Source of the DNA: Selaginella moellendorffii
Taxonomy: Eukaryota; Plantae; Lycopodiophyta
Direction: 5' to 3'
Assembly (NCBI RefSeq): GCF_000143415.4
Contig: NW_003314306.1
Coordinates: forward strand, 62,001 to 126,000
DNA: 64,000 nucleotides
Every line of letters starts with the position of its first letter. The first letter of the stretch is position 1. Shown here piece by piece: positions 1 through 49,108 of the stretch. A program made the translations under genes and the position numbers. The notes beneath the pieces were generated by a model. That model had not been told where the DNA came from and did no database searches. It worked only from the letters and a program-made list of their open reading frames with translations.

Positions 1-2553
1 CTAGTTGAGCACTGATGAGCTTTGCCAACTGCATCAACGATTCAGAAAATCAGATCATGCTACATTGCATTTGCACATTACTTGTTCTTGCATGTGTTCC
101 CTTATATCAATGGATGAACCAGTTTGAACCTTCGAAGCGCTTTTAACCATTTCGTTGATAGTCCGGTACAAGCCACTGAAGCAAATTTGAACTTCCTCGG
201 ATAAGTGGCTCACGAGAGATGGATCCCAGCTGTAGACACTGTTTGATGAGAAGTTCTCGCTTTTCAAAGCTTTGCTCACCTCCTGATAGCCTCAAGAATA
301 CATCTGGTCTGTGCAGGGCTGCCATAGTAATCGGCTAAATCGTCGAGCGTCGAGCTGAGGAGAGCGTACTTTGTGTAGAAGAGCCGCAACTCCGAGAACT
401 CTGGCTCAAACATGCAAGACGCAATGCTAAAGTGGGCTGTCACGACCTTGTCACCAAAAAATGGAAGATCTCCAAACTTGAGCGCGGCCCACCACCTTTA
501 CACAAACACAACTTAATCAAGGTGTGATTTTGAGCTTTATATTGTACCTCAAGAGCGTCTGGATTTCTGATTGGTGAATTGACTGGCATGCGTTGAAGTC
601 CTCTTTTGCCAGATTTATAAAGAGCTCATTGTTTACAAAAGGCAGCCTGTAGTTGATTCCTTAAGGAATTTCAAAAGCAAATAAAGAAAATCACCTGTAA
701 ATTGTTTTGGCTATCCATATATCGTTCGGGCCGTAATTGTGAATATAAGATTTAGAATACGCCCTTGGAAGACATGAATTCCACTGGTTCGATAACTCAA
801 ACTCTACCTGAATTGAGATTGAAAATGAACTATATCAATGTGTTAATTAGATGTGTACCTCTTGGAAAAAGTTTTTCTTGGCTGACCATTTGTCTAAGTA
901 AGCTTTATCAAGTTGTGATAAATATTTATGAGCATAGTTCTTAGCTTTTGTCAAGATATTGTCGTTTGCAAAAGCGACTTGGGATGCTCTGTATAGATTG
1001 AATATATCAGAAGCACCATGATATGATTCGCCAGGGAAACAGAAGAATTTGTCTTCGCTTGACATAAAATTTAGAAATACATCTACATAAACGCATTTTT
1101 TTCCATATGTATATGCATGAATAAACAGAATAAAAGAACCTTACCTGGTGTCACCTTATATCCATGCAACCTGAGCAGACGAAAGCCCATTGATGTGTCG
1201 TCAATATCTTTGAGATAGCTGTCTCTCCCCCATCCAATTCCTTTTTTATCACTCCAATATCTATCATAAAATTGTTAGTGGACAATTGTTATTGACTATT
1301 CATACTTACTTATACACATAATCTAATATGTTTTTAATTTCAGGTTGAAAATATCGATCAATTCCTAGCCTTTCCAAGGTATCAACAATCCATAAACGCT
1401 CAAATAAATCGATAGCATATTGACATGGCACTAAAGTTATAGTTTTTAGAATATTGACAGTATCAACTCAAACAACATAAATTTACCTGAGTTTTTCACT
1501 TTTTTAACCACTCCTTTGAGATACTCCAAGCATCTGGCGTCCTTTGTGTGCATATATACACAAGCTGTGGCGGAAGGGGAACTTAGAAACGATCCATCAG
1601 TGCCTATGAACTGTAAAATCTTTTCCCAGTTGATGTGATCTTGCAATCCTTCTAAAGAATATAGAATTGTTGTTGGAATAGAATGAACCATCTCTAATGG
1701 AATCCTGGATATGTAAAGAAAAATTAGTGCATTCAACTGACTATGTTAGCAAATTTGAGCTTAATTACTTTTGCAACTTCTTTTGACGATATCCTTGAAG
1801 AATTTTTAGAGCTGGAATATCAATTGGAATGTCTAGGCCCTTCTGTTTGGCTTCCTCTAGCATCGTCATAAAAATGAGCTCAAAACCACAAAGTAAATCT
1901 CCTTTATCTTTTGTAAGTTTGTATATGTTTTGCTTGAGGAATCTTTCACCTGATCACAAAATGTTAGGAGATAACCTTGATTTATACCATGGAAACTACC
2001 TTTATTGATGTTGTCATGTCCCAGGTTCCACGTTTTCAACGCAACTAAGCATGAGACTGTGCTCAATACCCGATCATAAATTTGGAAGTGGTTCCTATCC
2101 CCCCAAGATCCATCAGGAAGCTGGTTATGAGCAATCCACTCCAGTGTTTCGGGGAATTCTGGGCAAGTAGAGTTTGACTGCGAGGGGATCCGACCAACCC
2201 AAGCTGTGTCATAAGCAGAGGGACTGATTTCTCCATCGTCCAAGGATGCAAGCAATTTTCTCATTTCCTCTATCATATATGCTTTACTGTCGGTGGTGGA
2301 TGCTGGAACTGTTTCCTGTCAAAAGCATTGTAATCAGAGTGGAACACGAGGGGAAATACCTCCTCAGAGATTCATGACAAGGAGCACTCTCCTTCGTGAC
2401 GCTTGGTAAAGCCTTACAACGTTGCAATTGGCAGGATGAAAACTTATATTCCCTGCTCTGCAATCTACAACTGATCCGAGCATAATCAGAAGAGCCTGCA
2501 TATGGCACATCATGAACACTGAAGTTGCTTCCATATGCTCTGAATGAAATCAT
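1..2553 (-). CDS. CPSKSL1: Bifunctional class II/class I diterpene synthase (CPS/KS type), probably the labda-7,13E-dien-15-ol synthase; 3' end lies outside the window
   Basis: Hand-spliced GT-AG exons: 2553-2360 (putative), 2286-2000, 1949-1769, 1704-1487, 1430-1310, 1260-1145, 1082-859, 807-695, 646-548, 495-280, 229-82, 28-<1; frame stays open. Motifs: [16 protein letters not shown], class II DIDD (1208-1197), class I DDLAD (344-330). The protein from [23 protein letters not shown] matches my recollection of Selaginella SmCPSKSL1 (from memory, not searched). Confidence 0.92.
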
Positions 2554-2956
2554 ATTAGTGATTGTAGAATCAGGGCATCCCTTTGTTTTAAGCAAAGATC
2601 TGATGTGGACTTGGACTTATTTTGAGCAACGATGACGAACACGACCGCGAAGGCTCGCCACCCTTTCCAGTCTATTAAACTTTCTCGTCAACAATCCAAA
2701 TGCGCAACGATGTGGTTAGGCCGGCATGTTTGACTGACTTGCACATCCCTGGGAGTCGTGAACGACTCTGATAATCGGAGCGTAAAAAATTGCAGACCAC
2801 TTTTGAATATCCAGCTAATTCTGTCGCGATCTCATGCATGCATCACAATTTGGTGTCATGGTTCACGACGGGCACCACGAAACTACCAAAACAACACATA
2901 GATAGATAAGAAATTCTGACAGCCTGATTTGCACTGCTGTGGAAGGTACCCAAGTG

Positions 2957-4398
2957 ATGGATAAGCCTATCAAGTCCCAGGTTCACTTGGTAACTCCAGC
3001 AATCCCATCGTCCCCTGGCTGGAACTATGAGCTCACCAATCTCGACCTCATCAATTGGATCCCCAGGCCGGAGTACCATGAGCTTGTGTTCTTCTTCCGC
3101 GACTGCGTCTCTCCGCATCATGGCGAGCGAGAGCTCCACCAAGGCCTCAAGTCGTCCCTGTCCAAAGCACTGGCCGAGTTCCCTGTGCTCGCTGGCCGGA
3201 TTTGCCACGGCGAGGCACCTTTCAAGCTTAAGGTGAATGTCAACTCCCAAGGTGTGAACGTCATTGAATCCAGGAGCGATGCGAGCCTCGACGAGTGGTC
3301 GGACCTCAGGCAGTGCCCAATTTCGGTCGATTTCTCGCTTTCTGGTGATCATGCTGATCTCTCCCAGATGCCATTGATGCAAGTCCAGGTGACAACGTTT
3401 CGCTGTGGAGGAGTGGCCATTGGCTTCCACTTTCTACACATGGTCATGGACGGGTACAGCCTCGTCAAATTTCTCACGCGATGGAGTGAGATCCACCGTG
3501 GGGTCTCGCCAGTCAACCCAAGAAATCGCCAAGACTTCACAACCGCGGTGCTGAAAGCTCGCAGCTCTCCACTCGTGGATGCCCCGGTGCCTTTCGTCGT
3601 AGAACATGCACAGCAAGACGCACTCGGCTTCGACTTTGGAGGCGCGGAAGAACACGAGTCGATGGTGCTGCGGATGGGCAAACAGGCCATCGATTCCTGC
3701 GCCCGAGAGATCGAAAGCTCCACCAAGTTCGGCTAAGGCAGAGCCACCACCTTTGAGACTGTCTCGGCATTGCTTTGGTCGTCTATAACCGCAGCAAAAG
3801 CCATTCCCGAGCATCTTGATACTTCCTACATGCTGCCCATCAACTTGCGAAGCAAAGGTAGATTTGCGCCCCAGATCCCCGAAGACTACTTTGGCAATGC
3901 CCTCATTCCATGCCAGGCATACGCTGCCAGTGCGGGACAAGTCGCGAGTGACAAGAGCTTTGCTGCCAAGCTGATCCACGAGAAGATCATTAGCTCCGAC
4001 CACCTTCGCATGCGAGTGCCGTGGACTGGCTCGAGTTAAACTCTCCCATGGCACTGCCAGCATCACTTCACTGGAAGCGAGGTTTGCTCTCCACATCTCT
4101 GGGGAGGTTTCCAGTCTATGGCATTGATTTTGGCTGGCGGGGTGGCGCATTGGCTCAGCTTTGCCTTCTTCCGACTGCTCTGCCGCCTTCGTTTGTGGCG
4201 CTGTTTCCAGCTCCAGCCCCAGAGCCGAAATCGATCGATCAGAGCAGGGGCGTCGACATACACATCCGGCTGGCGAAAACTCACAAGGAAAAGCTGCTCA
4301 ATGACGTCTTCTTCACTCGCAACTTTGCTGACAAAGAGATCTCTAGCTGGTCAAAGAGTCTGTGTAAGAAAGCCTTGAAAGTTGCCGTGAAAGCGTGA
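2957..4398 (+). pseudogene. BAHD acyltransferase, intronless, disrupted by an in-frame stop and a frameshift
   Basis: Has LAEFPVLAGR, QVTTFRCGG, the catalytic HxxxDG (HMVMDG), YFGNA and DFGW. TAA at 3734-3736 interrupts a frame that continues to about 4010; the DFGW segment (ORF 4021-4398) is in another frame. Removing 4011-4015 restores DHLRSAVDWLE. Confidence 0.88.
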
Positions 4399-4500
4399 AA
4401 GCGTCGCTGTGTTTTCCTTTGATCTTGAATAAAGACCTTCGTAATCAAACACTTTCAAAAGGCTCATGAAAGATCGTTCAAACACCATTCATATCTCTGT

Positions 4501-4509
4501 TATATAAAT
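4501..4509 (+). promoter_or_regulatory. Putative TATA box of the CYP71-clan gene
   Basis: TATATAAAT about 45 nt upstream of ATG 4553, inside a 154-bp intergenic space. Confidence 0.45.
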
Positions 4510-4552
4510 CTAGGTCCTAAATTGAATCCAATACTTCCAAGTTCTAGCTAGA

Positions 4553-6125
4553 ATGGAACACTTCGATCTTGCCCTCTACCTGGGCTTGATCCTCCTGGCT
4601 GGAGCGCTATGGAGGCAATACCGCTCTTTCAAGGTACGACTACCACCAGGTCCGCGGGGCTTGCCTTTGATCGGCCATCTCCATCTCCTGAGCACACTGC
4701 CACACCGATCCTTGCAAAAGCTGTCGCAAGCCCACGGGCCACTCATGCACCTCCGATTTGGCACAGTACCAGTGATTGTGGCGTCCAGTCCAGCCATGGC
4801 CAAGGAAGTTCTCAAGACCCACGACCTCGCATTTGCGTCGAGGCCATACCTCCTCGTCGGTGAGTACGCTGCTTACAACTTCCACAACATTGGCCTCGCC
4901 CCCTATGGCGATCACTGGAAGATGATGAGGAAGCTGTGCTCCACCGAGCTCTTCACGGCCAAGCGGATCGACTCCTTCTCGTGGGTGAGAGTGGAGGAGC
5001 TGTCCGGCATGGTATCTGGATTGCTGGCGAAATCGGCGAGCAAGGAGGTGGTGCAAATCAAGAGCTTCCTCACCGACTTTACTTTCAATGTCATGACGCG
5101 AATCCTGATGGACCGGGCCTTCTTCGGGCCGGCTGGCGCGGACTCACAGGGCAAGGCACGGGAGTTTCGGGGGATTGTGGAGGAGATCTTGCAGGTGGCC
5201 GGGAGTTTCAACGTGAGCGAGTACATTCCCAGTGCATTCAAGTGGATCGACTGGAACATCCCTCGTTTCAAGAGGCTTCATGCTCGCCAGGACAGGTTCC
5301 TCCAGGAGATCATCGACGAACACAAGGTTGGTCACGATGCTCTAGCCAAGCCTAGAGATTTCATAGACATCCTTCTCTCCTATTTCAACCATGGAGACTC
5401 TCGAATCGACTTGGACAACATCAAAGCTGTGCTTTCAGTGAGTATTTGTTTTTCAAGAACAGCTCTTGACAATTGTGTATCAGGATTTGCTGCCAGGGGG
5501 AACCGACACATCCATCACAACAGTGGAGTGGATCCTGGCGGAGCTACTTCGAAACCCACTTGCATTGAAGAAGGCCCAAGACGAGCTCGACGCGGTGGTA
5601 GGGAAAGATCGCATGGTAAACGAATCGGATTTCCCCAAGCTCCACTACCTGCACGCGATCATCAAGGAGACCTTTCGTCTCCACCCCCCGATCGCGCTGC
5701 TCGTCCCACACATGTCAAGATACGAGTGCAAGGTGGCCGGCTACGACGTTCCAAAGGGGGCTACCACGCTCGTCAATGTCTACGCGATTGGGAGAGACCC
5801 AACGGTGTGGGAGGATCCCACTCGGTTCTCTCCCGATAGGTTCCTGGAGGGGGCGGGGAAGGGCATGGACGTCCGAGGCCAGGACTTCGAGCTCCTTCCA
5901 TTCGGCTCGGGGCGACGTTCGTGTCCTGGGCTTCAGCTGGGACTGAAAACGGTCGAGTTGGCTTTGTCAAATCTCGTCCATGGCTTCGACTGGAGCTTTC
6001 CCAACGGCGGCGGTGGCAAAGATGCTTCCATGGACGAGGCTTTCGGCTTGGTCAATTGGATGGCGACTCCATTGCGAGCTGTGGTTGCTCCTCGGCTACC
6101 ACCTCATGCTTATGAGAAAGTTTGA
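4553..6125 (+). CDS. Cytochrome P450, A-type (CYP71 clan), 508 aa, 2 exons
   Basis: Exons 4553-5437 and 5484-6125 with a 46-nt phase-0 intron at the typical A-type position. N-terminal TM anchor, PPGP, I-helix GGTDT, KETFR, PDRF and heme motif PFGSGRRSCPG. Confidence 0.95.
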
Positions 6126-7175
6126 CTGTTTACTAAAACTTAAAGCAGTTCTCCATATTTTACGTAGAAGTTTCTTGGCATGTTTTACGTAGAAGTTGCT
6201 TGGCCAAGTTCTCCATGTTTTGCGTAGAAGTTGCTTGGCCAAGTTCTCCATGTTTTGCGTAGAACTTGCTTCCTTGTTGTCAAATGTAAAGACTTCTATT
6301 CGTTCATGACTTTGATTGTTGTGTCAAATTACAATATTCGCCGGTGGACTCCGTCGGGCGGCTGGGTTGTGCATCGACCCTGCCGGGCGGCATCCCCCCA
6401 AAAGGGGTCGTTCCATGGCATTTTGTTCCAAAAATAAGTAAAGCCAAGTCAATAATGTTCGGAATCTACACAGTCATTAGACTAGAGCTTTCCCGAGGAT
6501 GGCGACTCGCTACCATGACAAATTTTGACTATTTTAAAAACTTGTTTTAAGAATTTATGAAGTCTGGCTACACGTTGCTTGCCCAAGTTCTCCATGTTTC
6601 ACGTAGAAGCTTCTTGTTCAATTTCCTAGAGTTTCCCATGTTTTACGCAGAAATTGCTTGGTCAAGTTTTCCATCTTTGGGGTAGAACTTGCTTCCTCAT
6701 TGTGAAATTAAAAGACTTTCATTCCTTCAAGACTCCTAATTGTGTTTGATTCAAATTACAATATTCCATGGCATTTTGTCATGGCTAGGCTAAAATCAGT
6801 CAATAATGTTCGGAATCTACAGGTATTAGACTAGAGATTTCCTGACGGTGGCAAATTTGGCTTGTGAAGTGGATGGCGACTCCATTGCTAACTTCGGCTT
6901 ATGACAAAGTTTGACTAACTTAAAGGCTCTTGACACATGTGCTTGGCCATGTTTCACTTACAAGCTGCTTGGTCAATTTCCTAGAAGTTTCTTGGCCAAG
7001 TTTTACTATGTTTCACGTAGAACATGCTTGTGAAGGTCTTCTATTTCCTTCAAGACTCGATTGTTAGTTGAAACTGGGAGTCAAATTACAATATTCGATG
7101 GCATTTTGTCATGGCTAGGTAAGAAACTCAAACACGAAAACCAAGTCAACAATGTTCTATTGGGATCTACACTCT
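6058..7175 (+). repeat. Three diverged tandem copies (about 300-440 bp) of the P450 3' end plus 3' flank, with internal 35-bp repeats
   Basis: GGATGGCGACTC at 6058, 6497 and 6871; CAAATTACAATATTC near 6325, 6752 and 7082; AATAATGTTCGGAATCTACA at 6451 and 6802; GTTGCTTGGCCAAGTTCTCCATGTTTTGCGTAGAA tandem at 6195-6264. Confidence 0.85.
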
Positions 7176-7309
7176 GTTCGTGAAAGGAGTTGTCTGGGCC
7201 GGAGCTTAAGAAATGCGTTCTTAGTCAGTTTCCCACATGGTTAGCTATAGACAGTGGGCAAGAGCTTAAGAAGTTGAGCATACTTAGAGAGATAGCTCTA
7301 GGCGCAGTT

Positions 7310-8837
7310 ATGGTGCCTGTGCTGGTACTTTACCTTCTTTGCATTGGGGCAGCAGCACTCGCGTATCTCCAGCGATGGAGAAGATTCAAAGCGATGGATC
7401 TGCCTCCTGGGAGCCTGGGCCTTCCGCTACTTGGCGAGACCCTCCAGTTCATACGATACACCAAGAGCAACCGGCCCTGGGAGTTTATCGAACAGCGGGA
7501 AGCCAAGTACGGTAAGATCTTCAAGACCTCATTGTTTGGCTCCCCAATGGTGATGGTCAGTCCTCCCCAAGGCAACAAGCTTGTCTTCTCAAACCACAAC
7601 CTCTTGGTGGAGACTGCGTGGCCTAGCCCGATGAAGACGCTGGTTGGATCAAACGCCATAAACTTCATGTCTGGAGAGGAGGCCAAGAGCTTCCGTGACG
7701 TGCTCATGACCTTTCTGAGTGCTCAAGCCGTCCAGAGCCAAGTTGTGCCTACGAGCAATATGATTCAAGATCACCTCCACAAGCACTGGAAGCATGGGGA
7801 GACCGTGCTGGCTTATTCTCTCATCAAACAGGCTCTCTTCTCGGTCACCTGTTGTGCATTCCTCAGCGTGAGTGATGAAGAAGAACAGCTGGAGCTGCTC
7901 GAGCCGCTGGCCAAGATCATCAAGGGGCTCATCTCCTTGCCGCTCGATCTCCCCTGGACGAACTTCCACCACGCCAAGAAGGGCCGGGTGGAGCTCTACA
8001 AGATGTTTGACAAGTATATCGCGCGGAGAAGGATCGAGCTCGAGAATGGGTCGTCTTCCCAGCAAGATCTCCTGTCACTGCTTCTCAGCACCAAGCTCGA
8101 CAATGGCAAGCTCATGAACGACGACCAGATCAAAGACAACATCCTATCGCTGCTCTTCGCCGGCCATGACACCAGTTCCAGCTCGCTAGCCATGACCCTC
8201 AAGTGCCTGGCTCAAAATCCAGCCTGCTACCAGGAACTTCGCAGAGGTAAGCAAACTTGTCGAAGATTTTTGATCGAAACTTACCATGATCATCTATGCC
8301 AGAACACTTGGATATACTATCAGCCAAGCAGCCTGGGGAGGAACTCAACCAGAACGACCTCCGCAAGATGAAATACACATGGATGGTCATCCAGGAGACA
8401 CTGCGAGTGATGCCGACCGGGTTTGGCATCCTTCGCAAAGCCCTCAAAGATATCGAGATGGATGGTTTCACCATCCCAAAAGGCTGGCAGGTAATTACCA
8501 TCTCTTTTGTTTACCTATAGGAAAGAATGTAATCTCTTTGCTGCAGCTCTTAATATCGGGCTACCGGAGCTACAGAAAACCAGAGTTTTTTGCCGAGCCT
8601 TTCAAGTTTGAGCCATCCCGATTTGCAGAAGGCACGGGACCGGTTCCATACACATATATTCCATTCGGTGGAGGACCCCGGATTTGCCCGGGCATCCAAC
8701 TTGCGAAAATGCAGGTGATGGTGTTTCTTCACCACTTAGTCACAAGATATGAGTGGACCCTAGTGGAACCCGATGAACCAGTTTCCTATACCCCAGTTGC
8801 AATGCCGACTAAAGGACTGCCAATTAAGTTAAAGTAG
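7310..8837 (+). CDS. Cytochrome P450, CYP85 clan (CYP716/CYP725/CYP720-like), 471 aa, 3 exons
   Basis: Exons 7310-8246, 8303-8490 and 8547-8837 total 1416 nt in frame. Motifs PPGSLGLPLLGETLQF, KYGKIFKTSLFG, FAGHDT, QETLR, FEPSRF and YIPFGGGPRICPG. Confidence 0.93.
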
Positions 8838-8984: not shown

Positions 8985-11703
8985 TTAGGATGCGACCATT
9001 GGATCATTTGCTTCTTCTTGTTTAAATCCGTGCCTGTATATGTCATAGTTATTGCGGCTTCCCTGCGCGAATGGACGCTCGCCAAGCACTGCTAAGAGGT
9101 CCTCCTGCCGCAGGACCTCTTTCTCAAGCAGCAGCTCCGCGATCTTGGCAACCCCGTCCCTGTGCTTGTCAATCAGTGCTCGGGTGCGAGCGTAGGCATC
9201 ATTCACTATCGCCCTCGCCTCCTCGTCCATGAGTTTGCTCGTATTGTTGCTAAAAGGCTTGAGCAGCTCCGTCTGTGACTTGCGGGGAAAGGAGACAAGC
9301 CCAACTTTGTCGCTGAATCCATACTCGGCCACCTGCGCGTAGGCCATCAGCGTGACTTTCTCCAGATCGTTCTGCGCACCCGTGGTGATCCTTCCCAGCA
9401 GAACCTGGAGAGAGAAACATCAGGACCTTTTTCCTCCAAGTTTGTTCTTACCTCCTCCGCTGCTCGCCCTCCAAGAGCCATACAGATTATGTCATTGAAT
9501 TGCTGCTTGGTCATGAGTAAGTCCTCGTTGGGAACGTATTGCGCAAAGCCCAGCGCCGCACTCCCTCGTGGAACTATTGTAACTTTGAGTAGCGGCTCCG
9601 CGTGCTCTAAGAACCACCCGGCGACGGCATGACCAGCTTCGTGGTAAGCAACAGTCCTCCGTTCGTCCTTGCTAACTACCTGTGTTGAAACTGTGTTATC
9701 TCGCGAGAAAACTTTGACAAGAAAACCCGTAGTACGTACCCTGTTCTTTCGCTCGATGCCGGCAATAACTCTGTCGACTCCTGCTTCGAGCTCCTTCATG
9801 GAAATCTCTGACTTCTCACGCCTTGCAGCTATGAGAGCAGCTTCATTGCACACGCTGGCAATCTCCGCCCCAGCAAAGCCGTGTGTGAGACCAGCAACTC
9901 GTTGTGAGTAAAACTGAGGCTCCTTGTCCAGCTTCAGTTTCTTGAGATGCACCCGAAGTATCTGTTCTCGTCCTCGCACATCCGGCCTGTCTAAAGCAAT
10001 CTGACGATCAAAGCGTCCAGGCCTGAGCAACGCCTTGTCGAGAATATCTGGCCTGTTTGTCCCAGCGAGTATGACTACTCCTTCTGTAGTTGCAAAGCCG
10101 TCCATTTCAACCAGGAGCTGGTTGAGGGTGTTTTCACGTTCATCGTTTGACCCAAGACCAGCACCTCTTGCGCGGCCGATGGCATCGATCTCGTCAATAA
10201 AGATGATGCTCGGGGCTTCCCGACGAGCTTGAGCAAAGAGGTCTCTGACTCGAGAAGGTCCAACCCCGACGAACATCTCTGTAAAGTCAGAACCGGAGAT
10301 CGAAAGAAATGGCACACCGGCTTCACCTGCAGTAGCCTTTGCTAGCAGCGTTTTGCCGGTGCCAGGAGGTCCGACCAAGAGAGCACCTTTGGGGATTCTC
10401 GCACCGAGGTCGAGGTACTTTTTGGGACTCTTCAAAAAGTGAACGAACTCCATCACTTCTGCTTTGGCTTCGTCGCATCCGGCTACGTCCGCGAACATGA
10501 CCTGCATAGTTAAAATGCAAAGTCAGTAAGCTCTCCAAGAGTAAAACAATATACTACCATGCCTTATCTTTGACGCCTGGATCCATCCTTGCCACCTGAG
10601 CCTTTCCCATGGTAAAAATGCTGCGACCACCATTGCTATCCGTCCCCTGCCCAGTGCCAGCTCTCTTCCATTTCCAGACGGAAAATCCAACCCACGCAAA
10701 GAGGAAGAGAATCGGTGCCATGTTCGTAAGCTCTCGCCGCCAATTCAACTCGGTTTGATACATGACTGGGACGTAATCGTGCGAGTCCCACCCGAGGCTG
10801 GCTTGCGCCCTCTCCAGTTGCTGCTCGAAACCATCAGCACTGCCGATTCGAAAAAAGTGTCGGCAATGACTCTGAGTGTCGTCACTAGAAGCTGGGTCCC
10901 GAACAAAAACGCGGACCAAGCTCCTGTTAACCACGACAACATGGTCTACGAGACACTGCTCCAAGAGCTCAGATCGGAATTGATGGTAAGTAATCTGGAA
11001 AGAAAAAGTGTATGCTGTGAGAAACGAAGAGAAGAAAATGGAGAAGGAGAAAAGAACCTCCGAGACATCTTCACTTCTAGAAACGGTATAGAGGTTCCAC
11101 AACGCCGCCACTGATAAGCCGACAGCAACCAAGGATACAATTCTTGTTCTGAGATCTCCGAGATCCCGTGCTCGGGGTTTCGATTTTCCTGGAAGAAAGG
11201 CAAAACGTAAGTTCTCCAGAGTAGACGTTTGATACCTTGGTTTGACTTCTCCTCGGGACCATCTTTTGGAACCTTGTTCTTTGGATAGAAGTTACTGAAG
11301 CCTGGAAAAACAAAGTATTAACGCTATTGCTAACAATTAATTTCATCTTTCTCAATTCCAACCTCTTTCCGATGCTTTACTCGAATAGAATTGCCGAGTG
11401 CCGAGATTGCTACCTTGGTATCGCTGTTGTTTGTGCGCTCCTCTCAAATCACGGCCGCGCCGTAATCCGCACGCGCCGCCGCTGCCAATCCAGCTTCCGA
11501 AAGACCACTGCGTCGGGATAGGATCAAAACCCAGCCGGTGCTCTAGAATGCTGCCGAGACACGGATTATCCACCAGAATGCCGCGATTCTCCCTGAATGC
11601 CTGGCCGGAGGAGAGGGAAATGAGATCGAGAATGGCTGCGCCGCGCGAGACTTACCGAGAGGATTCGTTTTCTTGCGAGGAGCGCGGCCAGCTGCCGAGA
11701 CAT
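8985..11703 (-). CDS. Mitochondrial m-AAA protease, FtsH3/FtsH10 (AFG3-like), multi-exon
   Basis: Walker A GPPGTGKT, Walker [32 protein letters not shown], zinc motif HEAGH, two TM segments with an FtsH_ext-like region. Probable start [16 protein letters not shown] (11703) resembles a mitochondrial presequence. Confidence 0.93.
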
Positions 11704-14589: not shown

Positions 14590-16530
14590 TCAATCCACCA
14601 CCACCATGTCCTCGTAGATCCTGTCCGAGATGGCACTCCGGAGGATGAGCATGGGATCGATAGCCCCGCTGTTCTCCAGGAACATCTTGAGTATGTTCTT
14701 GGAGAAGCCCGAGACGAGCGCCACGCCAGGCTCGTCCTTGAGCACCGGGACGCTCTCCGAGTCCCTCAAGTTCCAGAAGACAATCTGCGGCGGCTCCTCG
14801 TACCCGGCCTCCTTGAACTTGCGCTTGATCGCCATATGATCCGTCTCCCAACCTGGCGCCTGTTCGCCACCCCACCAATCCGGCCGAGGATTGTACACGC
14901 CGCCGTAGTGTTTCCCCCTGGCCTCGTCAAACTCCATGTCGCTGTAGACGAAGAGCCTCTTCACCATCTTCTCCGGCGGGACGTTAAACTCGCGGGCTCG
15001 CTCCAGGATCCGATCAAACACCTTCTGGAAGTCGGTGTTCATGTCCCACGGCATCCTCGTCGTGAACTCGTACTTCTCCGCCAGCGTCTCGCCCCGGATC
15101 TCGTGGAAGGCCGGCTCGTCGCTGAAAGTTATCAGCCGACCCTTCCACGGCTCGTCGCTCAGCTCCGCCGTGATCATCCCCAGCGCGATGCAAACCTCCA
15201 TCGGCGTCCCGGTCATACTCCCGGACACGTCGCAGACGGACACCGAGTTCTCCAGGGTCCCCTTCCGCCGCAGCTCGTCCACCATCGCCCTCCACTGCAG
15301 CTCCGCCGCGTCTCTCTCCGCGCCATCCTTGGTGACAGCAGCGCGGAGGATCTCGTGCGGGAGAACCGCCCCGGCCGCGATCTTTTCCTTGCCGGACTTG
15401 ACGTCCTCGAGGTACTGCTTGAACCGCTCCTCGTCGTGCTTGGTGAAGATCTTCGAGTACGTCTTCATCGCCACCGACGCCACCCGGTTGTATGGCAGCT
15501 CGTCCCACCTCTGCGCGCTCATGTACACCTCCGGGAGCTCCAGCGCCTTGCGCAGTGGAACCAGAACCTCCTTGCGCAGCTTGTCGCGAGCTCGGTACGC
15601 GTACTGCCTCTGGTCCAGCTCCGCGAACTCGGAGGTGCTGTTCTTCGGGAAGAGCTTGCACGCGATCGCCTCGCACAGCAGTGTCTGCTTGTCATAGGCG
15701 GAGTCGAGAGATGGACACCACTTCGCCGCGAGACTGATCCTCGCATTGTTCTTGTGCTGCTTGTACGCCTCCAGATCCTTGGCGAGCGCGTCGGCGAAGA
15801 CGCGAGCAACGCCGGCGTACACCGCTGCAAACTCGGGATCCTTGGCGAGCCTGTCGATCGCGCGGCGAGCCAGCGCCAGCGATCTCTCCTTGCGCAGCTC
15901 GGAAGCCTGTTGCTTCTCGGCCTTGTCCTTGGCGATGCTCGCCGCTACTCGCTCCTCCCGGTCGCCTTGCGTAGCGATCCTTGCTCTGTCCGTGATCCTT
16001 GCGCATCTGTCCCGGCCGCTCCGGCGGATCCTCGAGCGCCACCGCCGATCACGTCTCTTGTTCTTCCACTCCTCCTTCTCGCGCATCCTCTGCGCCGTCA
16101 CCACCTCGCCTTCCAGGATCCGCTGGACGAGCTCCAGGAGATCCTTGAAGTAGCCGACCGGGGCGACCTTGGCGATGTTGGCGGCCAGCGTCCGGGGGTG
16201 GTGATCGTAGAGCCAGCATGCAGCGTCATAGAAGTGGAGCTTGTCCGATTTGCCGCTGCCACGGATCCCCCGGAGCTGGAAGATGAGCTTGAGAGTCGTC
16301 AAGGGATCTTCTTTCCAGGCCATGGTGGCCAGCTCCTTGACGCGCGAGGAATCGGTGGTGTCGGGGACGATGTGGAAGAAGAAATCGAGGCAGGCCGAGC
16401 CGGATGCGAGGTAAGTGTCGGCGAGATTCTCGGTGAGGCCCTTGAGTGGGAGAGGATCGATCGCCATACCTTGGAGGGCGAGCTCCGGCGGGCCGCAGAT
16501 CGTGAGTACTTCCTCGTTGATCAACGCCAT
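14590..16530 (-). CDS. DUF2828-family protein with C-terminal vWA-like domain, intronless, 646 aa
   Basis: TEN..T..SGSACLDFFF, LRGIRGSGK, SLAAKWCPS, YNRVASVAM, CDVSGSM (MIDAS-like), SDMEFD, IVFWNLR and LVSGFS. Confidence 0.9.
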   Translation of the reverse strand: MALINEEVLTICGPPELALQGMAIDPLPLKGLTENLADTYLASGSACLDFFFHIVPDTTDSSRVKELATMAWKEDPLTTLKLIFQLRGIRGSGKSDKLHFYDAACWLYDHHPRTLAANIAKVAPVGYFKDLLELVQRILEGEVVTAQRMREKEEWKNKRRDRRWRSRIRRSGRDRCARITDRARIATQGDREERVAASIAKDKAEKQQASELRKERSLALARRAIDRLAKDPEFAAVYAGVARVFADALAKDLEAYKQHKNNARISLAAKWCPSLDSAYDKQTLLCEAIACKLFPKNSTSEFAELDQRQYAYRARDKLRKEVLVPLRKALELPEVYMSAQRWDELPYNRVASVAMKTYSKIFTKHDEERFKQYLEDVKSGKEKIAAGAVLPHEILRAAVTKDGAERDAAELQWRAMVDELRRKGTLENSVSVCDVSGSMTGTPMEVCIALGMITAELSDEPWKGRLITFSDEPAFHEIRGETLAEKYEFTTRMPWDMNTDFQKVFDRILERAREFNVPPEKMVKRLFVYSDMEFDEARGKHYGGVYNPRPDWWGGEQAPGWETDHMAIKRKFKEAGYEEPPQIVFWNLRDSESVPVLKDEPGVALVSGFSKNILKMFLENSGAIDPMLILRSAISDRIYEDMVVVD

Positions 16531-28753: not shown

Positions 28754-30778
28754 ATGTCGAGGATCATCGCTGCCGCCAGGTTTGTCACTCCACCCCGATC
28801 GCGCTTCCTCTCCACCGCCGCCAGGACCGCCACCACCAGCGATGATCGCCACAAATTCTCGCTCTGCGGCCCACCCGCGGCCCCCAAAAGTCCACTCATG
28901 GGAACCACCGAGAACCTGGGCCTCACCTTCTACGAGTCGGGCTCCGCATGCCTGGATTTCTTCTTCCACATCGTCCCGGTGACCACCGATAAGTCGCGCG
29001 TCCAGGAGCTGGCCGCGGCGGCGTGGGCGGAGGATCCTCTCACCACGCTCAAGCTCATCTTCCAGCTCCGGGGCGTCCGCGGCACGGGCAAATCGGACAA
29101 GCTCCACTTCTATGACGCCGCGTGCTGGCTCTACGAGCACCACCCTCGCACACTCGCAGCAAACATCGCCAAGGTTGCCCCGGTTGGCTACTTCAAGGAT
29201 CTCTTGGAGCTCGTCCAGAGGATATTAGAAGGCGAGGAGGTGACCGAGAAGAGGATCGAGGAGAAAAGGCAGCACAAGCGGAGGAAGCCACCGAAAGAAT
29301 CGGTGATGAGCTCGACGAGGGGCTATAGGAGGAGCTTGTTCTCCTGGACGAAGCCATCGGGGAAGAACAAGTGGGCGAGAGCGTCGTCCAAGCTCAAGAT
29401 CGGCACCAAGGAGGACAGGATCGCGGCCAGCCTCAAGAGGGACAAGCTGTTGAAGCAGCAGGCGTCGGAGCTTCGCAGGAGGAAAGCGCTGGAGCTGGCC
29501 AAGCGCGTGATCGAGCGGCACGAGAAAGATGACGAGTTCGCGGCGATCTACTCGGGTGTTGCGCGTGTTTTCGCCGAGGCTCTGGCCAAGGACATGGAAG
29601 CGCTTCGCAGCGACAAGGAGAAAGCGAGGCTCAGCCTCGCCGCGAAGTGGTGTCCATCGCTCGACTCGTCGTATGACAAGCAGACGCTGCTATGCGAGGC
29701 GATCGCGCGGCTGCTCTTCCCGAAGGACAGCTCTCCCGAGCTCGCGGAGCTCGAGCAGCCGCACTACGCTTACCGGATCCGCGACAAGCTGCGCAAGGAG
29801 GTCCTGGTTCCACTGCGCAAGGCGCTGGAGCTACCGGAGGTGTTCATGAGCGCGCAGAGGTGGGATGAGCTGCCATACAACCGGGTGGCGTCGGTGGCGA
29901 TGAAGAACTACACGGAGATCTTCATGAAGCACGACGAGGCGCGCTTCAAGCAGTTCCTGAGCGACGTCGAGGCCGGGAAGAAGAAGATCGCGGCGGGGGC
30001 TTTGCTCCCGCATGACATACTCAGGGACGCGGTGGAGGAGCACCGCGAGACGGCGGAGCTGCAGTGGAGGGCGATGGTGGACGAGCTGCGGCAAAAGGGG
30101 AGCTTGCAAAACGCGGTCTCGATCTGCGACGTGTCCGGGAGTATGTATGGGACGCCGCTGGAGGTGGCGATCGCGCTGGGACTCCTCACGGCGGAACTGA
30201 GCGATGAGCCGTGGAAGGGGCGGCTGATAACTTTCAGCAACGAGCCCGCATTCCACGAGATCACCGGCAAGACGCTGGCGGAGAAGTACCAGTTCACGGC
30301 GAGGATGCCGTTGGACATGAACACCGACTTCCAGAAGGTGTTTGATCGCATCCTGGAGCGAGCACGCGAGTTTAACGTCCCGCCCGAGAAGATGGTCAAG
30401 AGGCTCTTCGTCTACAGCGACATGGAGTTCGACGAGGCCAGGGGCGGACCGGCAAACAATCCTAGTCCGAATTGGTGGGGTGGAAGCTCGCCATCGCCGC
30501 CAGCCGCTTCGGAGGGATGGCTCACGGATTATGAATTGATCAAGCAGAAGTTCAAGGCTGCCGGATACGATGAGCCGCCGCAGATCGTGTTCTGGAACCT
30601 GAGGGACTCGGACAGCATCCCGGTGACCAAGGACGAGCCTGGCGTGGCGCTCGTCTCGGGCTTCTCCAAGAACATACTCAAGATGTTCCTCAACTACGAC
30701 GGCCGGGTGAATCCCATGATAATGCTGCACAACGCCATCTCGGGCCCGATGTTCGAGGACATGGTAGTCGTTGACTAG
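28754..30778 (+). CDS. DUF2828-family protein with vWA-like domain, second paralogue, intronless, 674 aa, with a presequence-like N-terminus
   Basis: Same motifs as 14590-16530 (SGSACLDFFF, SLAAKWCPS, CDVSGSM, SDMEFD, IVFWNLR), plus the N-terminal extension MSRIIAAARFVTPPRSRFLSTAARTATT. Confidence 0.9.
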   Translation: MSRIIAAARFVTPPRSRFLSTAARTATTSDDRHKFSLCGPPAAPKSPLMGTTENLGLTFYESGSACLDFFFHIVPVTTDKSRVQELAAAAWAEDPLTTLKLIFQLRGVRGTGKSDKLHFYDAACWLYEHHPRTLAANIAKVAPVGYFKDLLELVQRILEGEEVTEKRIEEKRQHKRRKPPKESVMSSTRGYRRSLFSWTKPSGKNKWARASSKLKIGTKEDRIAASLKRDKLLKQQASELRRRKALELAKRVIERHEKDDEFAAIYSGVARVFAEALAKDMEALRSDKEKARLSLAAKWCPSLDSSYDKQTLLCEAIARLLFPKDSSPELAELEQPHYAYRIRDKLRKEVLVPLRKALELPEVFMSAQRWDELPYNRVASVAMKNYTEIFMKHDEARFKQFLSDVEAGKKKIAAGALLPHDILRDAVEEHRETAELQWRAMVDELRQKGSLQNAVSICDVSGSMYGTPLEVAIALGLLTAELSDEPWKGRLITFSNEPAFHEITGKTLAEKYQFTARMPLDMNTDFQKVFDRILERAREFNVPPEKMVKRLFVYSDMEFDEARGGPANNPSPNWWGGSSPSPPAASEGWLTDYELIKQKFKAAGYDEPPQIVFWNLRDSDSIPVTKDEPGVALVSGFSKNILKMFLNYDGRVNPMIMLHNAISGPMFEDMVVVD

Positions 30779-47192: not shown

Positions 47193-49108
47193 TTACTTAG
47201 TTTTAGTTTTAATTTTAATTTTAGTTTCCTCGCTATTTTGACCACCTTCCATTAATTCCACACGGAACAGGCCATCCCCATCAGCGAGTAGCCAGTTGAT
47301 ACATGCTTTGAAGCTAGCGGGGAAAGTTTCATTTCTTACCGCAGCCGACAAGGTTGAGTTCTTGTCGGCTCCTCCTCCATACCAACCTAGAAGATCCAGA
47401 AAGGTGAGCACCAGCGAGTACCAGTCATCCCTGTACAGGAAACCTTCAGCCCCATCAAACAGAGGAGACTCAAAGTACGGCGCACCGACCCTCATCCTCC
47501 TAATCTCCACGCTCTCGTCCACAAGACATGAACAGTCGAAGTCATTCAACCACAGCTCATCATGGAAGATGAGCATATTTGACGGCTTGATATCACGGTG
47601 AAGAACCCCGCGAGAGTGCAGCCCGACTAAAGCTGCCGAGGCTTGGTTCCAACAGCCCTGAAAATCCCACAGTACATTGTCCGAAGTCACCGGCCTGCCA
47701 AACCCCGCCAGTACCATCCACTCAAGGCCGTCGCCCGCACCAAGCACTTGACCGCACCAGCGCAGACCTTTCCGCTGAGGACGAGTGAAACTGGTTCCAT
47801 CCACGCGCTCGTGAATGAAAGTTTCCCTACCGATTCTGCTGCGGTCGGAAACCTTGATGACGCAATCTTCCCCCGGAAGTTTAAAAACGACTGACTTGTA
47901 CCCCTGCCCCACTATAGAAGCTGTGCTCAAGTCAATGCTTTTGCTACCGTCGTTTCTTGCAAGCTCGAGGGGAGCCTTTGGAATGCTGTACAAAGTGCAG
48001 AGCGTGTCGACATACCTGAATTTCAGAATTATCAGTATGAAAAAGGCAGAATAAGGAGGAGTTACCTGACTAAAAGGTGGAATCCATTGTTCGGCTCCGA
48101 AGGACATATATCAATGAGCTTGCTGCCCTCTTTGGCCGTGTTGAGAAGAGCGAGGTCGCAAAGCACGTTACTCATTTCCCACCCTGGACCGCAGGGAAAC
48201 TCCGGAGCCACTTCACACGAAACCACCGCTTCCCCACGCTGCTCGTATCGGAACTTTACGAACCAGACGTACTCGCAACGAGTTGCGAAAATCCCCAGGT
48301 GGCATGGCAGACCTGCATACTTCTTATTTGACTTATACATCTTACTGATTCCGGCAACGTTTCTCTCGATGCCTGTCTCTGGCTTCCCACTCACAGCCAG
48401 ACTGAAAGCAGCTTTCACTTCATGTGCTTCGTTGAATTTTCCACCCAAAATGCTGCTACTTAAATCTTCGCGTGCCCCTCCCACATGAACCTCCCTGAGA
48501 AATTTCACTTCAGGCTGCCCTCCAGATGACGCTTCCATAAACTTGAAGAGCAACGGATGGTATTCGAGTTCCTTGTCATTCTGTGTTTTACTTCGGCCTT
48601 TCCTCATGTTCAGCACGTCGGTCAGATCAGTCTCTTTGGCTTCATACAGCAAGAAATGCAGCCATCTTAGTTCTGCCACCAAATGTCGAGGACTTTCCAG
48701 TAACTCATCCACACCGACAATCTGCCGAGGAATATTATCCTTCCAGATGACTTTCTCCTTACAGTCCTCAAAATTAACAGAGACGATTGAAGAATTTCGT
48801 AGCAGAGAAGCCTCCGGCAGTCTTCGTTTTTTGAGCGGACAGAGAGATAGGCGCTTTTGCTCGTAATCAAGCTCCTTCCTCTTGGTAAATTCGAGGTGGT
48901 CTTCCACAAGAGTCTTCCTGTAGGCTGTTATTCCATCAGTGACCTCCTTGAACTTCTCAAATCCCTTCTCCCGTATTACTTCCGCCGCTATACTTTGTGC
49001 CCAAGCCAATTGGCGGTTGATGCTCTCCCAAGAACGAGCAAGCTCAGCATCGTAGGGCTTCCAAGCCTGCAATTCACCATCTACGTTACTCAATTCAGAC
49101 GCCTCCAT
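47193..49108 (-). CDS. Two-exon 621-aa protein: putative PD-(D/E)xK REase-like region fused to an atypical protein kinase (Crinkler/CR-effector- or FunK1-like architecture)
   Basis: Exons 49108-48066 and 48015-47193 join through a 50-nt phase-2 GT-AG intron with the frame open. Kinase motifs: VGQGYKSVV, VIK, LHRDIKPSN, NDFD, VGAPYF and DDWYSL. The N-terminal part has E..YHP, REVHVGGAREDL and AHEVK; the REase call is less certain than the kinase call. Confidence 0.8.

What the first reader, a model, noticed from the sequence alone, without database searches (positions are those of the whole stretch)
1..8837. Candidate lycophyte diterpenoid (labdane) biosynthetic gene cluster: diTPS + BAHD + two unrelated P450s
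Seen: four contiguous genes of specialised-metabolism type in under 9 kb with no unrelated gene between them. They are a bifunctional diterpene synthase (DIDD and DDLAD), a BAHD acyltransferase 403 bp away head-to-head, a CYP71-clan P450 154 bp downstream of that, and a CYP85-clan P450. Known: scaffold synthase + P450s + acyltransferase from non-homologous families is the standard plant terpenoid cluster architecture, and the two P450s belong to different clans, so this is not a tandem array. Inference: if the synthase is the labda-7,13E-dien-15-ol synthase, the P450s would oxidise the labdane and the BAHD would acylate a hydroxyl such as C15-OH. I know of no characterised lycophyte terpenoid cluster, but could not search. 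The cluster may extend left of the window.
Basis: partly seen in the sequence, partly recalled or inferred. Interest (0 to 1): 0.92.

Follow-up and report, generated by a model that had tools for sequence, protein, structure and literature searches.

The report
Spikemoss labdane synthase gene cluster candidate
In the spikemoss Selaginella moellendorffii, the gene for a known diterpene alcohol synthase sits directly beside an acyltransferase gene and two unrelated P450 oxidase genes, a plausible but untested biosynthetic gene cluster, and the copy in this window is partly broken.

Summary
Window 1-8837 (S. moellendorffii GL377610.1) carries four contiguous specialised-metabolism genes:
- a bifunctional diterpene synthase (minus strand, cut by the window edge);
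- a BAHD acyltransferase 403 bp away, head-to-head;
- a CYP71-clan P450 154 bp further on;
- a CYP716-like (CYP85-clan) P450.

The synthase is the allele (about 99% identical) of the characterised labda-7,13E-dien-15-ol synthase SmCPSKSL1. The cluster does not extend left or right: its neighbours are a CURT1-like gene, a PPR gene and a mannosidase on one side, and FtsH on the other.

All four genes are transcribed in the same RNA samples, with silent intergenic DNA. Two samples cannot test co-expression. The synthase changed 3.2-fold between them and the others 1.0-1.3-fold.

New here: this window is the degenerate haplotype.
- Its synthase allele has a 10-nt deletion that stops the N-terminal presequence, and it gives only about 3% of the synthase reads.
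- Its BAHD allele has a nonsense codon and a 1-nt deletion.
- The other haplotype (GL377628.1) has all four genes intact.

No paper I could search describes this cluster or any lycophyte diterpenoid cluster. A shared pathway remains unproven. I class it as a new member of a known kind, of moderate interest.

The parts
1..2553 (-). Diterpene synthase gene, the window-haplotype allele of SmCPSKSL1 (TPS-h, bifunctional class II/I). Exon 1 is 2360-2553, intron 2316-2359, exon 2 is 2000-2315, and nine further exons run down to position 1. The last ~560 bp of the gene lie left of the window.
   Evidence: Exact exon chain found by mapping protein P0274 onto the locus. It is 98.9-99.1% identical to the characterised enzyme (P0275, P0121). 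Spliced reads confirm introns.
2365..2366 (-). Site of a 10-nt deletion in exon 1, relative to the other haplotype. It shifts the frame of the 81-residue N-terminal presequence. The spliced reading frame from ATG 2553 stops at codon 79 (window 2273-2275).
   Evidence: Alignment of the two haplotypes; translation of the spliced exons. Reads carrying the 10 extra letters are the ones seen in RNA (tables 5 and 5c).
1197..1208 (-). DIDD, the class II (DxDD) catalytic motif of the synthase.
   Evidence: Read directly; residue 284 of P0274.
330..344 (-). DDLAD, the class I (DDxxD) metal-binding motif of the synthase.
   Evidence: Pfam Terpene_synth_C hit on this exon; residue 501 of P0274.
2554..2956 (.). 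403-bp divergent intergenic region between the synthase and the BAHD, a putative bidirectional promoter. It carries an 11-bp insertion (2901-2911) relative to the other haplotype.
   Evidence: No RNA at 2700-2899, with transcripts running outward on both strands; indel seen.
2957..4398 (+). BAHD acyltransferase, single exon, a pseudogene allele in this haplotype. HMVMD is at 3437-3451 and DFGWR at 4126-4140.
   Evidence: Pfam PF02458. The other haplotype has an intact 480-aa ORF. The nearest paralogue is 43% identical, and the best solved relatives are HCT-type BAHDs at E 2e-34.
3734..3736 (+). Premature stop TAA in the BAHD (TAT, Tyr260, in the other haplotype).
   Evidence: RNA reads show both letters (A in 4 of 15 reads in X23, 0 of 17 in X24), and a DNA-run contig carries the A.
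4014..4015 (+). 1-nt deletion (a C is missing) that frameshifts the BAHD.
   Evidence: RNA reads both with and without the C: 9 of 12 and 9 of 15 carry it (table 4).
4553..6125 (+). CYP71-clan P450, 508 aa. Exons 4553-5437 and 5484-6125, with a 46-nt intron. The heme-binding motif FGSGRRSCPG is at 5901-5930. Intact on both haplotypes.
   Evidence: It is 99% identical to SELMODRAFT_120910. The intron is confirmed by 63 and 60 reads. The best solved relative is ferruginol synthase CYP76AH1, E 7e-92.
7310..8837 (+). CYP716-like P450 (CYP85 clan), 471 aa. Exons 7310-8246, 8303-8490 and 8547-8837. The heme-binding motif FGGGPRICPG is at 8664-8693. Intact on both haplotypes.
   Evidence: The translation equals P0286. 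It is 40-46% identical to named CYP716 members. The best solved relative is taxadiene 5-alpha-hydroxylase, E 2.8e-113.
8985..11703 (-). FtsH-type AAA protease gene, the unrelated right-hand boundary of the cluster.
   Evidence: ORFs; annotated as a 774-aa AAA + Peptidase_M41 product.

Best explanation
This is the SmCPSKSL1 locus of Selaginella moellendorffii. I think it is most likely a small biosynthetic gene cluster for decorated labdane diterpenoids.

Shown:
- The synthase is the allele of the enzyme that converts GGPP to labda-7,13E-dien-15-ol.
- It sits head-to-head with a BAHD acyltransferase across a 403-bp shared upstream region.
- Two P450s of different clans follow, all within about 9.4 kb and with unrelated genes on both sides.
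- All four are transcribed in the same samples.

Inferred pathway:
- The plastid-targeted synthase makes the C15 alcohol.
- The CYP716-like and CYP71-clan P450s on the ER hydroxylate or further oxidise the decalin ring or side chain.
- The BAHD esterifies a hydroxyl (C15-OH or one introduced by a P450) with an acyl-CoA.

The copy in this window is the decayed haplotype:
- Its synthase allele has lost its presequence reading frame and contributes about 3% of the synthase mRNA.
- Its BAHD allele is a pseudogene.
- Both P450 alleles are intact and expressed.
- The allelic haplotype on GL377628.1 has all four genes intact and would be the working version.

The confidence given is for at least two of the three neighbours acting on the synthase's product.
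For: Identity of the synthase:
- The 90%-identity cluster of the synthase holds AEK75338 and UniProt G1DGI7 (SmCPSKSL1), together with the two genomic alleles.
- Pairwise identities are 98.9-100%.
- The DIDD, DDLAD and NDIGTYQFE motifs are present.

Physical clustering:
- The same four-gene order is found on both haplotype scaffolds, with unrelated flanks.
- There are no further biosynthetic genes in the other 55 kb of the window.
- The SmMDS locus and the locus of the closest CYP716-like paralogue are not clustered, so this arrangement is not a general feature of the genome.
- The chance expectation is far below one per genome (rough estimate, partly from memory).

Family fit:
- P450-2 is 40-46% identical to CYP716 members, and its best solved relative is the diterpene hydroxylase taxadiene 5-alpha-hydroxylase.
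- P450-1's best solved relatives are the labdane-related diterpene oxidases ferruginol and sugiol synthase.
- A BAHD (CcLAT) acetylates this same alcohol, labda-7,13E-dien-15-ol, in Cistus (PMC11156806).

Expression: stranded RNA reads give four separate transcription units in the same two samples, and similar contig depths in a third run.

Selection:
- dN/dS between haplotypes is 0.26 for the synthase and 0.18 and 0.11 for the P450s, which indicates constraint.
- Each gene is a diverged singleton rather than a tandem copy. The nearest paralogues are 43-53% identical.
- The synthase and its head-to-head BAHD partner are both disabled on the same haplotype. That is what relaxed selection on a dedicated partner would produce.
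Against: - No enzyme assay, metabolite or genetic evidence links the neighbours to the synthase.
- No oxidised or acylated labdane is recorded from Selaginella in the 2013 review, and the role of the synthase's product is called elusive.
- Between the only two quantifiable RNA samples the synthase changed 3.2-fold, while the BAHD, P450-1 and P450-2 changed 1.1-, 1.3- and 1.0-fold. This is no sign of tight co-regulation, although n = 2 proves nothing.
- The P450s are 2-6 times more abundant than the synthase.
- The BAHD's closest solved relatives are hydroxycinnamoyl transferases, not terpenoid acyltransferases.
- The solved-structure matches of the P450s are biased by how few plant P450 structures exist.
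- The genome is compact, about one gene per 2.4 kb, so nine kilobases is simply four ordinary gene slots.
- Many computed plant clusters have not proved functional (my knowledge).
- Co-decay of two alleles out of four genes, against none clearly broken in six flanking genes, is not statistically significant.
- Synteny in other lycophytes could not be examined.
Confidence: 0.42

Rival explanations
1. Adjacency without a shared pathway. The four genes lie together through the history of a compact, rearranging genome or a shared permissive chromatin neighbourhood, and each acts in a different pathway. For example, the BAHD and the CYP71-clan P450 could act on phenolics and the CYP716-like P450 on triterpenoids or sterols.
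For: - The BAHD's closest solved relatives are HCT and rosmarinate-synthase type enzymes.
- CYP716 enzymes are best known as triterpenoid oxidases (PMC5303825).
- The synthase's level moved independently of the other three between two samples, and the P450s are expressed several-fold higher.
- Both P450 alleles on the haplotype with the dead synthase stay intact, constrained and expressed, as expected if they do not depend on it.
- No Selaginella labdane derivatives are on record.
Against: - A run of TPS, BAHD and two P450s from different clans is expected far less than once per genome under independent placement.
- The control loci show ordinary neighbours.
- The divergent 403-bp arrangement with the BAHD suggests shared regulation.
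- Intact P450 alleles on the decayed haplotype are also expected in a heterozygote, where products of the other haplotype's synthase are available to them.
Confidence: 0.3
2. Partial link only. One neighbour, most likely the head-to-head BAHD or the CYP716-like P450, works with the synthase as a two-gene module, and the others are bystanders. The locus would then fall short of the formal three-gene cluster definition.
For: - The synthase and the BAHD share the divergent upstream region, and they are the two genes disabled on this haplotype.
- BAHD dN/dS between haplotypes is 0.68, against 0.11-0.26 for the others.
- A BAHD acetylating the same alcohol is known in Cistus.
- TPS/P450 pairs are a recognised unit in plant genomes (my knowledge).
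Against: - BAHD transcript level did not follow the synthase between the two samples (1.1-fold against 3.2-fold).
- Nothing separates one P450 from the other as the better candidate.
Confidence: 0.23
3. The breaks in the window's synthase and BAHD alleles are assembly or sequencing errors, and both haplotypes carry fully working clusters.
For: - The 10-nt deletion in the synthase could not be checked against an independent DNA run, because run X1 has no contig over 1900-2699.
- NCBI still annotates a 750-aa product from the internal ATG.
Against: - Both BAHD lesions are seen in RNA reads of independent 2026 runs alongside the intact letters, and the stop letter is in a 2024 DNA-run contig.
- Synthase reads come about 97% from the other allele at five separate SNPs in two runs, and the contig of a third run carries the same five letters. 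This fits a real defect with mRNA decay or a cis-regulatory loss.
Confidence: 0.05

Closest known systems
Momilactone gene cluster of the moss Calohypnum plumiforme (cited in PMC9945934)
   Same: It is a non-seed plant locus. A bifunctional class II/I diterpene synthase lies next to P450s of different families, and the cluster was assembled independently of seed-plant clusters.
   Different: It is functionally validated. It contains a dehydrogenase and no BAHD, uses other CYP families, and makes a pimarane-type product rather than a labdane alcohol.
Rice labdane-related diterpenoid clusters Os2BGC and Os4BGC (PMC9945934)
   Same: They combine diterpene cyclases with non-homologous tailoring enzymes (CYPs) in one locus. 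Allelic or haplotype variation and co-inheritance arguments apply to them as well.
   Different: They have separate class II and class I synthases and several tandem copies. They span hundreds of kilobases, contain dehydrogenases instead of an acyltransferase, and have proven products and inducibility.
Cistus creticus labdane pathway: CcLDDS1/2 plus the BAHD acetyltransferase CcLAT (PMC11156806)
   Same: It has the same intermediate, labda-7,13E-dien-15-ol, and a BAHD that esterifies its C15 hydroxyl. This is direct chemical precedent for the proposed BAHD step.
   Different: It is an angiosperm pathway found from a trichome transcriptome, and no clustering was reported. The synthases are class II only. 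CcLAT groups with alcohol acetyltransferases, whereas the Selaginella BAHD is a lineage-specific branch whose nearest solved relatives are HCT-type enzymes.
Taxane and forskolin pathways (diterpene synthase, then CYP725 or CYP76AH oxidation, then BAHD acylation)
   Same: The same three enzyme classes act in the same order. P450-2's best solved relative is taxadiene 5-alpha-hydroxylase, and P450-1's is the CYP76AH ferruginol synthase.
   Different: Sequence identity is only about 40%, the scaffolds differ, and those pathways are largely not encoded as a compact four-gene block.
Other candidate terpenoid clusters noted by this scan in the same genome (microbial-type terpene synthase + P450s; s1-334485, s1-420466)
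   Same: The organism is the same and a terpene synthase lies beside P450s. One of them was also judged a decaying copy.
   Different: Those involve microbial-type (MTPSL) synthases and other partner families. This locus involves a canonical, biochemically characterised plant diterpene synthase. I did not re-examine those notes.

Membership tests
Plant biosynthetic gene cluster (three or more non-homologous genes, adjacent, acting in one pathway) | Three or more genes of distinct enzyme families lie physically contiguous. | tested here: met
   TPS, BAHD, a CYP71-clan P450 and a CYP85-clan P450 lie in about 9.4 kb with no gene between them, on both haplotypes.
Plant biosynthetic gene cluster (three or more non-homologous genes, adjacent, acting in one pathway) | The genes contribute to a shared metabolic pathway. 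| not testable with these tools
   This needs enzyme assays or genetics. Only family-level plausibility is available.
Plant biosynthetic gene cluster (three or more non-homologous genes, adjacent, acting in one pathway) | The members are co-expressed. | tested here: inconclusive
   All four are transcribed in the same two raw-read RNA runs and in one assembled run.
Plant biosynthetic gene cluster (three or more non-homologous genes, adjacent, acting in one pathway) | Linkage is conserved in related species. | not testable with these tools
   No other Selaginella or lycophyte orthologues appeared in the protein searches. The best non-moellendorffii hits are 44-49% identical, and the locus collections hold no plant genomes.
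SmCPSKSL1 / TPS-h bifunctional class II/I diterpene synthase | Class II DxDD, class I DDxxD and NSE/DTE motifs. | tested here: met
   DIDD (residue 284), DDLAD (501) and NDIGTYQFE (647) in P0274. The first two lie inside the window.
SmCPSKSL1 / TPS-h bifunctional class II/I diterpene synthase | Sequence identity to the characterised enzyme. | tested here: met
   The window allele P0274 is 99.1% identical to AEK75338 and 98.9% to G1DGI7. The other haplotype's product is 100% identical to G1DGI7.
SmCPSKSL1 / TPS-h bifunctional class II/I diterpene synthase | Intact full-length reading frame, including the N-terminal presequence. | tested here: not met
   For the window allele only: a 10-nt deletion gives a stop at codon 79. 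The other haplotype's allele meets it (831 aa).
SmCPSKSL1 / TPS-h bifunctional class II/I diterpene synthase | The product is labda-7,13E-dien-15-ol. | not testable with these tools
   This is known for the cloned enzyme (Mafu et al. 2011, as cited). The window allele differs at 8 residues and was not assayed.
BAHD acyltransferase | HXXXD catalytic motif, DFGWG-type motif and the Pfam Transferase domain. | tested here: met
   HMVMD (residue 161) and DFGWR (391) in the intact allele; PF02458 at E 7e-31.
BAHD acyltransferase | Open reading frame. | tested here: not met
   The window allele has TAA at codon 260 and a frameshift at codon 353. The other haplotype has an intact 480 aa.
CYP716 family (CYP85 clan) | About 40% or more identity to family members, plus the P450 signature motifs. 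| tested here: met
   40-46% identity to proteins named CYP716 from moss, gymnosperms and eudicots. AGHDTS, ETLR, PSRF and FGGGPRICPG are present. These names are mostly automatic, and the official nomenclature name was not looked up.
CYP71 clan (A-type P450) | Best relatives lie in CYP71-clan families, with the signature motifs. | tested here: met
   41-45% identity to proteins named after CYP92, CYP71AU and CYP736, and 50-53% to Selaginella paralogues. GGTDTS, ETFR and FGSGRRSCPG are present. No single named family is clearly closest.

The most novel reading that the evidence does not exclude
The locus is a working four-gene cluster that makes oxidised, acylated labda-7,13-dien-15-ol derivatives. 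That would be the first diterpenoid biosynthetic gene cluster shown in a lycophyte. The reference plant would be heterozygous for a working and a half-dead version, with synthase and acyltransferase lost together on one haplotype. That would be a natural snapshot of cluster decay and of co-inheritance acting on a cluster outside seed plants.
Probability: 0.35. Interest if true: 0.72.

Novelty: new member of a known kind. Interest (0 to 1): 0.55.

Why it matters
SmCPSKSL1 was characterised in 2011, but what the plant does with its product is still described as elusive (PMC6779861). This locus supplies three named, intact, expressed candidate genes for the next steps, so the question can be tested directly by co-expression in a heterologous host.

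The diterpenoid clusters listed in a 2022 specialist review are from rice, Lamiaceae, Euphorbiaceae and one moss. A validated lycophyte cluster would extend independent cluster assembly to another ancient lineage.

The two haplotypes also give a natural comparison. On one, the synthase and acyltransferase are intact. On the other, both are broken. This bears on whether cluster members are kept or lost together.

Tried and rejected
- Cluster extension to the left: rejected. The next genes are CURT1/CAAD-like, a PPR protein and a GH38 mannosidase.
- Further biosynthetic genes in the other 55 kb of the window: none. It holds DUF2828 twice, kinase-like ORFs, a transposase remnant and a clamp-loader-like gene.
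- TPS-P450 clustering as a general habit of this genome's canonical diterpene synthases: not seen at SmMDS, nor at the CYP716-like paralogue.
- Neighbours of the closest BAHD and CYP71-clan paralogues: the look-ups failed because those products are not on record.
- Reads reaching 5968-5999 with loose ends on both sides (about 43 per run): at first I suspected an allelic rearrangement in P450-1. The two haplotypes are collinear there, so I take these reads to come from another transcript that shares about 31 nt.
- Papers: Mafu 2011, Li 2012 and Banks 2011 are not held. The expression-atlas preprint contains no physical-cluster analysis. The TPS-evolution paper's table of plantiSMASH clusters was cut off in storage. 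plantiSMASH 2.0 was run on S. moellendorffii but mentions only an unrelated cluster. An automatic prediction of this locus may therefore exist that I could not see.
- Full-length search of the synthase by reference was impossible because the exons are short. I reached it through one exon in the representative library and then through cluster members.

Full report
**Source and alleles**

The window is Selaginella moellendorffii scaffold GL377610.1, positions 62001-126000. The second P450's translation is identical to an annotated protein on that 1.5-Mb scaffold. The fetched locus L002 matches the window exactly at an offset of 2691.

A second scaffold, GL377628.1 (locus L001), carries the same genes in the same order at 97-98.7% nucleotide identity. 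Synonymous divergence is 0.017-0.035 in every gene tested. These are the two haplotypes of the heterozygous reference plant. Conserved linkage between haplotypes therefore holds, but it carries little weight.

**The four genes**

Synthase. Pfam and direct reading confirm a terpene synthase on the minus strand, with DIDD at 1197-1208 and DDLAD at 330-344. Mapping the annotated protein back onto the DNA gave an exact exon chain. Ten and a fraction exons lie inside the window, and about 560 bp lie beyond its left edge.

BAHD. It is a single-exon gene at 2957-4398 with HMVMD and DFGWR motifs.

P450-1. Its exons are 4553-5437 and 5484-6125, encoding 508 aa. It has a 46-nt intron that 63 and 60 spliced reads confirm.

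P450-2. It has three exons between 7310 and 8837 and encodes 471 aa.

**Which synthase**

One exon, searched against the representative library, led to a 90%-identity cluster. That cluster contains:
- the cloned labda-7,13E-dien-15-ol synthase (AEK75338; UniProt G1DGI7, SmCPSKSL1);
- the RefSeq product of the GL377628.1 gene, 831 aa and identical to G1DGI7 over 750 residues;
- the product annotated on the window's scaffold, 750 aa and 98.9-99.1% identical.

The miltiradiene synthase SmMDS is only 47% identical.

**The neighbours' families**

- P450-2 is 40-46% identical to proteins named CYP716 from moss to eudicots. Among solved structures it matches taxadiene 5-alpha-hydroxylase best, at E 2.8e-113. 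A kingdom-wide study lists lycopod-specific CYP716 subfamilies.
- P450-1 is 50-53% identical to Selaginella paralogues and 41-45% to several CYP71-clan families. Its best solved relatives are ferruginol and sugiol synthases. Few plant P450 structures exist, so these top matches are suggestive only.
- The BAHD is a lineage-specific branch. Its nearest paralogue is 43% identical and everything else is at or below 30%. Its best solved relatives are HCT-type enzymes at E 2e-34.

**Boundaries and chance**

- Left of the synthase lie a gene whose first exon is CURT1/CAAD-like, a PPR gene and a GH38 mannosidase.
- To the right come FtsH, a radial-spoke protein, a NIF phosphatase and DUF2828.
- The rest of the window holds nothing biosynthetic.
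- The SmMDS locus and the locus of the closest CYP716-like paralogue have only housekeeping neighbours.

With rough family sizes, partly recalled from memory, independent placement predicts far fewer than one such run per genome. The physical cluster is real and non-random, and it consists of exactly four genes.

**Expression (window 1900-7899)**

Two stranded raw-read RNA runs show four clean transcription units on the expected strands. Depth is zero at 2700-2899 and 6300-7099.

| Gene | Mean depth, X23 | Mean depth, X24 | X24/X23 |
|---|---|---|---|
| Synthase | 10.7 | 34.8 | 3.2 |
| BAHD | 15.1 | 17.2 | 1.1 |
| P450-1 | 52 | 69 | 1.3 |
| P450-2 | 69 | 68 | 1.0 |

The genes are expressed together, but the synthase changed independently of the others. 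Two samples cannot decide co-expression. A third run's assembled contigs cover all four genes at similar depth. RNA-like assemblies from six studies each hold 0.30-0.55 of the stretch's words, which fits broad expression.

**The window is the decayed haplotype**

BAHD:
- Relative to L001, the window's BAHD has TAT changed to TAA at codon 260 (3734-3736) and a missing C after 4014.
- RNA reads show both variants at both sites, and a DNA-run contig carries the stop letter. The lesions are therefore real alleles.
- BAHD dN/dS between haplotypes is 0.68. The comparison values are 0.26 (synthase), 0.18 and 0.11 (P450s), 0.05 (FtsH) and 0.33 (DUF2828).

Synthase:
- The intact allele's mRNA starts upstream of the annotated ATG of the window's allele and encodes 81 extra N-terminal residues across a 44-nt intron. 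Spliced reads confirm this.
- The window's allele lacks 10 nt just before that intron, so the frame from ATG 2553 stops at codon 79.
- Only internal initiation could then give the 750-aa protein. That protein begins exactly at the conserved core and has no presequence. That the extension is a plastid transit peptide is my inference from its position and composition.
- At five SNPs in two runs, 92-100% of synthase reads come from the other allele (about 97% pooled), and a third run's contig carries the same five letters. The window's alleles give about 35-50% of P450-1 reads and 25-40% of P450-2 reads.

Both P450s are intact on both haplotypes. Loss of the synthase and its head-to-head partner on the same haplotype is what one would expect if the BAHD serves the synthase. 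However, two of four genes against none clearly broken in six flanking genes is not significant.

**Literature**

- The 2022 review of plant diterpenoid evolution, from the laboratory that characterised SmCPSKSL1, lists clusters from rice, Lamiaceae, Euphorbiaceae and one bryophyte, and none from a lycophyte.
- A 2019 review calls the role of the SmCPSKSL1 and SmMDS products elusive.
- None of the 5 papers naming SmCPSKSL1, or the 14 pairing its product with the species, appears from its title and abstract to describe downstream genes or a cluster. Only four of them were read in part.
- In Cistus a BAHD acetylates the same alcohol.
- plantiSMASH has been run on this genome, so an automatic prediction of the locus may exist. 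I could not check this.

**Verdict**

The most likely reading is a small labdane-decorating cluster, at about 0.4. A partial link is about 0.23 and mere adjacency about 0.3. The locus is a new, unvalidated member of a known kind. Its main value is that it makes the downstream fate of a known diterpene directly testable. It also offers an intact and a broken haplotype for comparison.

**Constraints**

Noticed in passing
window 1900-2553 (synthase 5' part): Expression of the synthase is almost entirely from one allele. At SNPs 2085, 2171, 2194, 2246 and 2439, 92-100% of RNA reads in two runs carry the other haplotype's letter (about 97% pooled), and a third run's contig carries the same letters. 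The adjacent BAHD and the two P450s show both alleles.
   Followed up: partly
window 5968-5999: About 43 reads per RNA run match only this roughly 31-nt stretch of P450-1 and diverge on both sides. The two haplotypes are collinear here, so another well-expressed transcript, probably a paralogous P450, shares this short stretch.
   Followed up: partly
window 6888-7290: The intergenic DNA between the two P450s is largely unalignable between the haplotypes; only 7082-7175 matches. The DNA run shows further small indels at 6495, 6936 and 7212. This is a haplotype-specific insertion or deletion in a silent spacer.
   Followed up: no
window 14590-16530 (-) and 28754-30778 (+): Two full-length DUF2828 + DUF7788 genes lie 12 kb apart in opposite orientation, a local duplication of a gene of unknown function.
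   Followed up: no
L001 19130-19632 against L002 16569-17090: The NIF-domain gene is annotated with 139 aa on one haplotype and 173 aa on the other, and the radial-spoke gene with 514 against 510 aa. Allelic length differences are therefore not confined to the cluster.
   Followed up: no
window 47193-49126 (-): Two adjoining ORFs lie in an AT-rich region with a transposase remnant nearby (DDE_1 at 56933-57583). The downstream ORF has a partial protein-kinase domain. Another first-stage note (s1-419447) covers this place.
   Followed up: no
window 2571-2579 (-): A two-codon upstream ORF (ATG CCC TGA) lies just 5' of the synthase start codon at 2553, near or beyond the transcript's poorly covered 5' end.
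   Followed up: no
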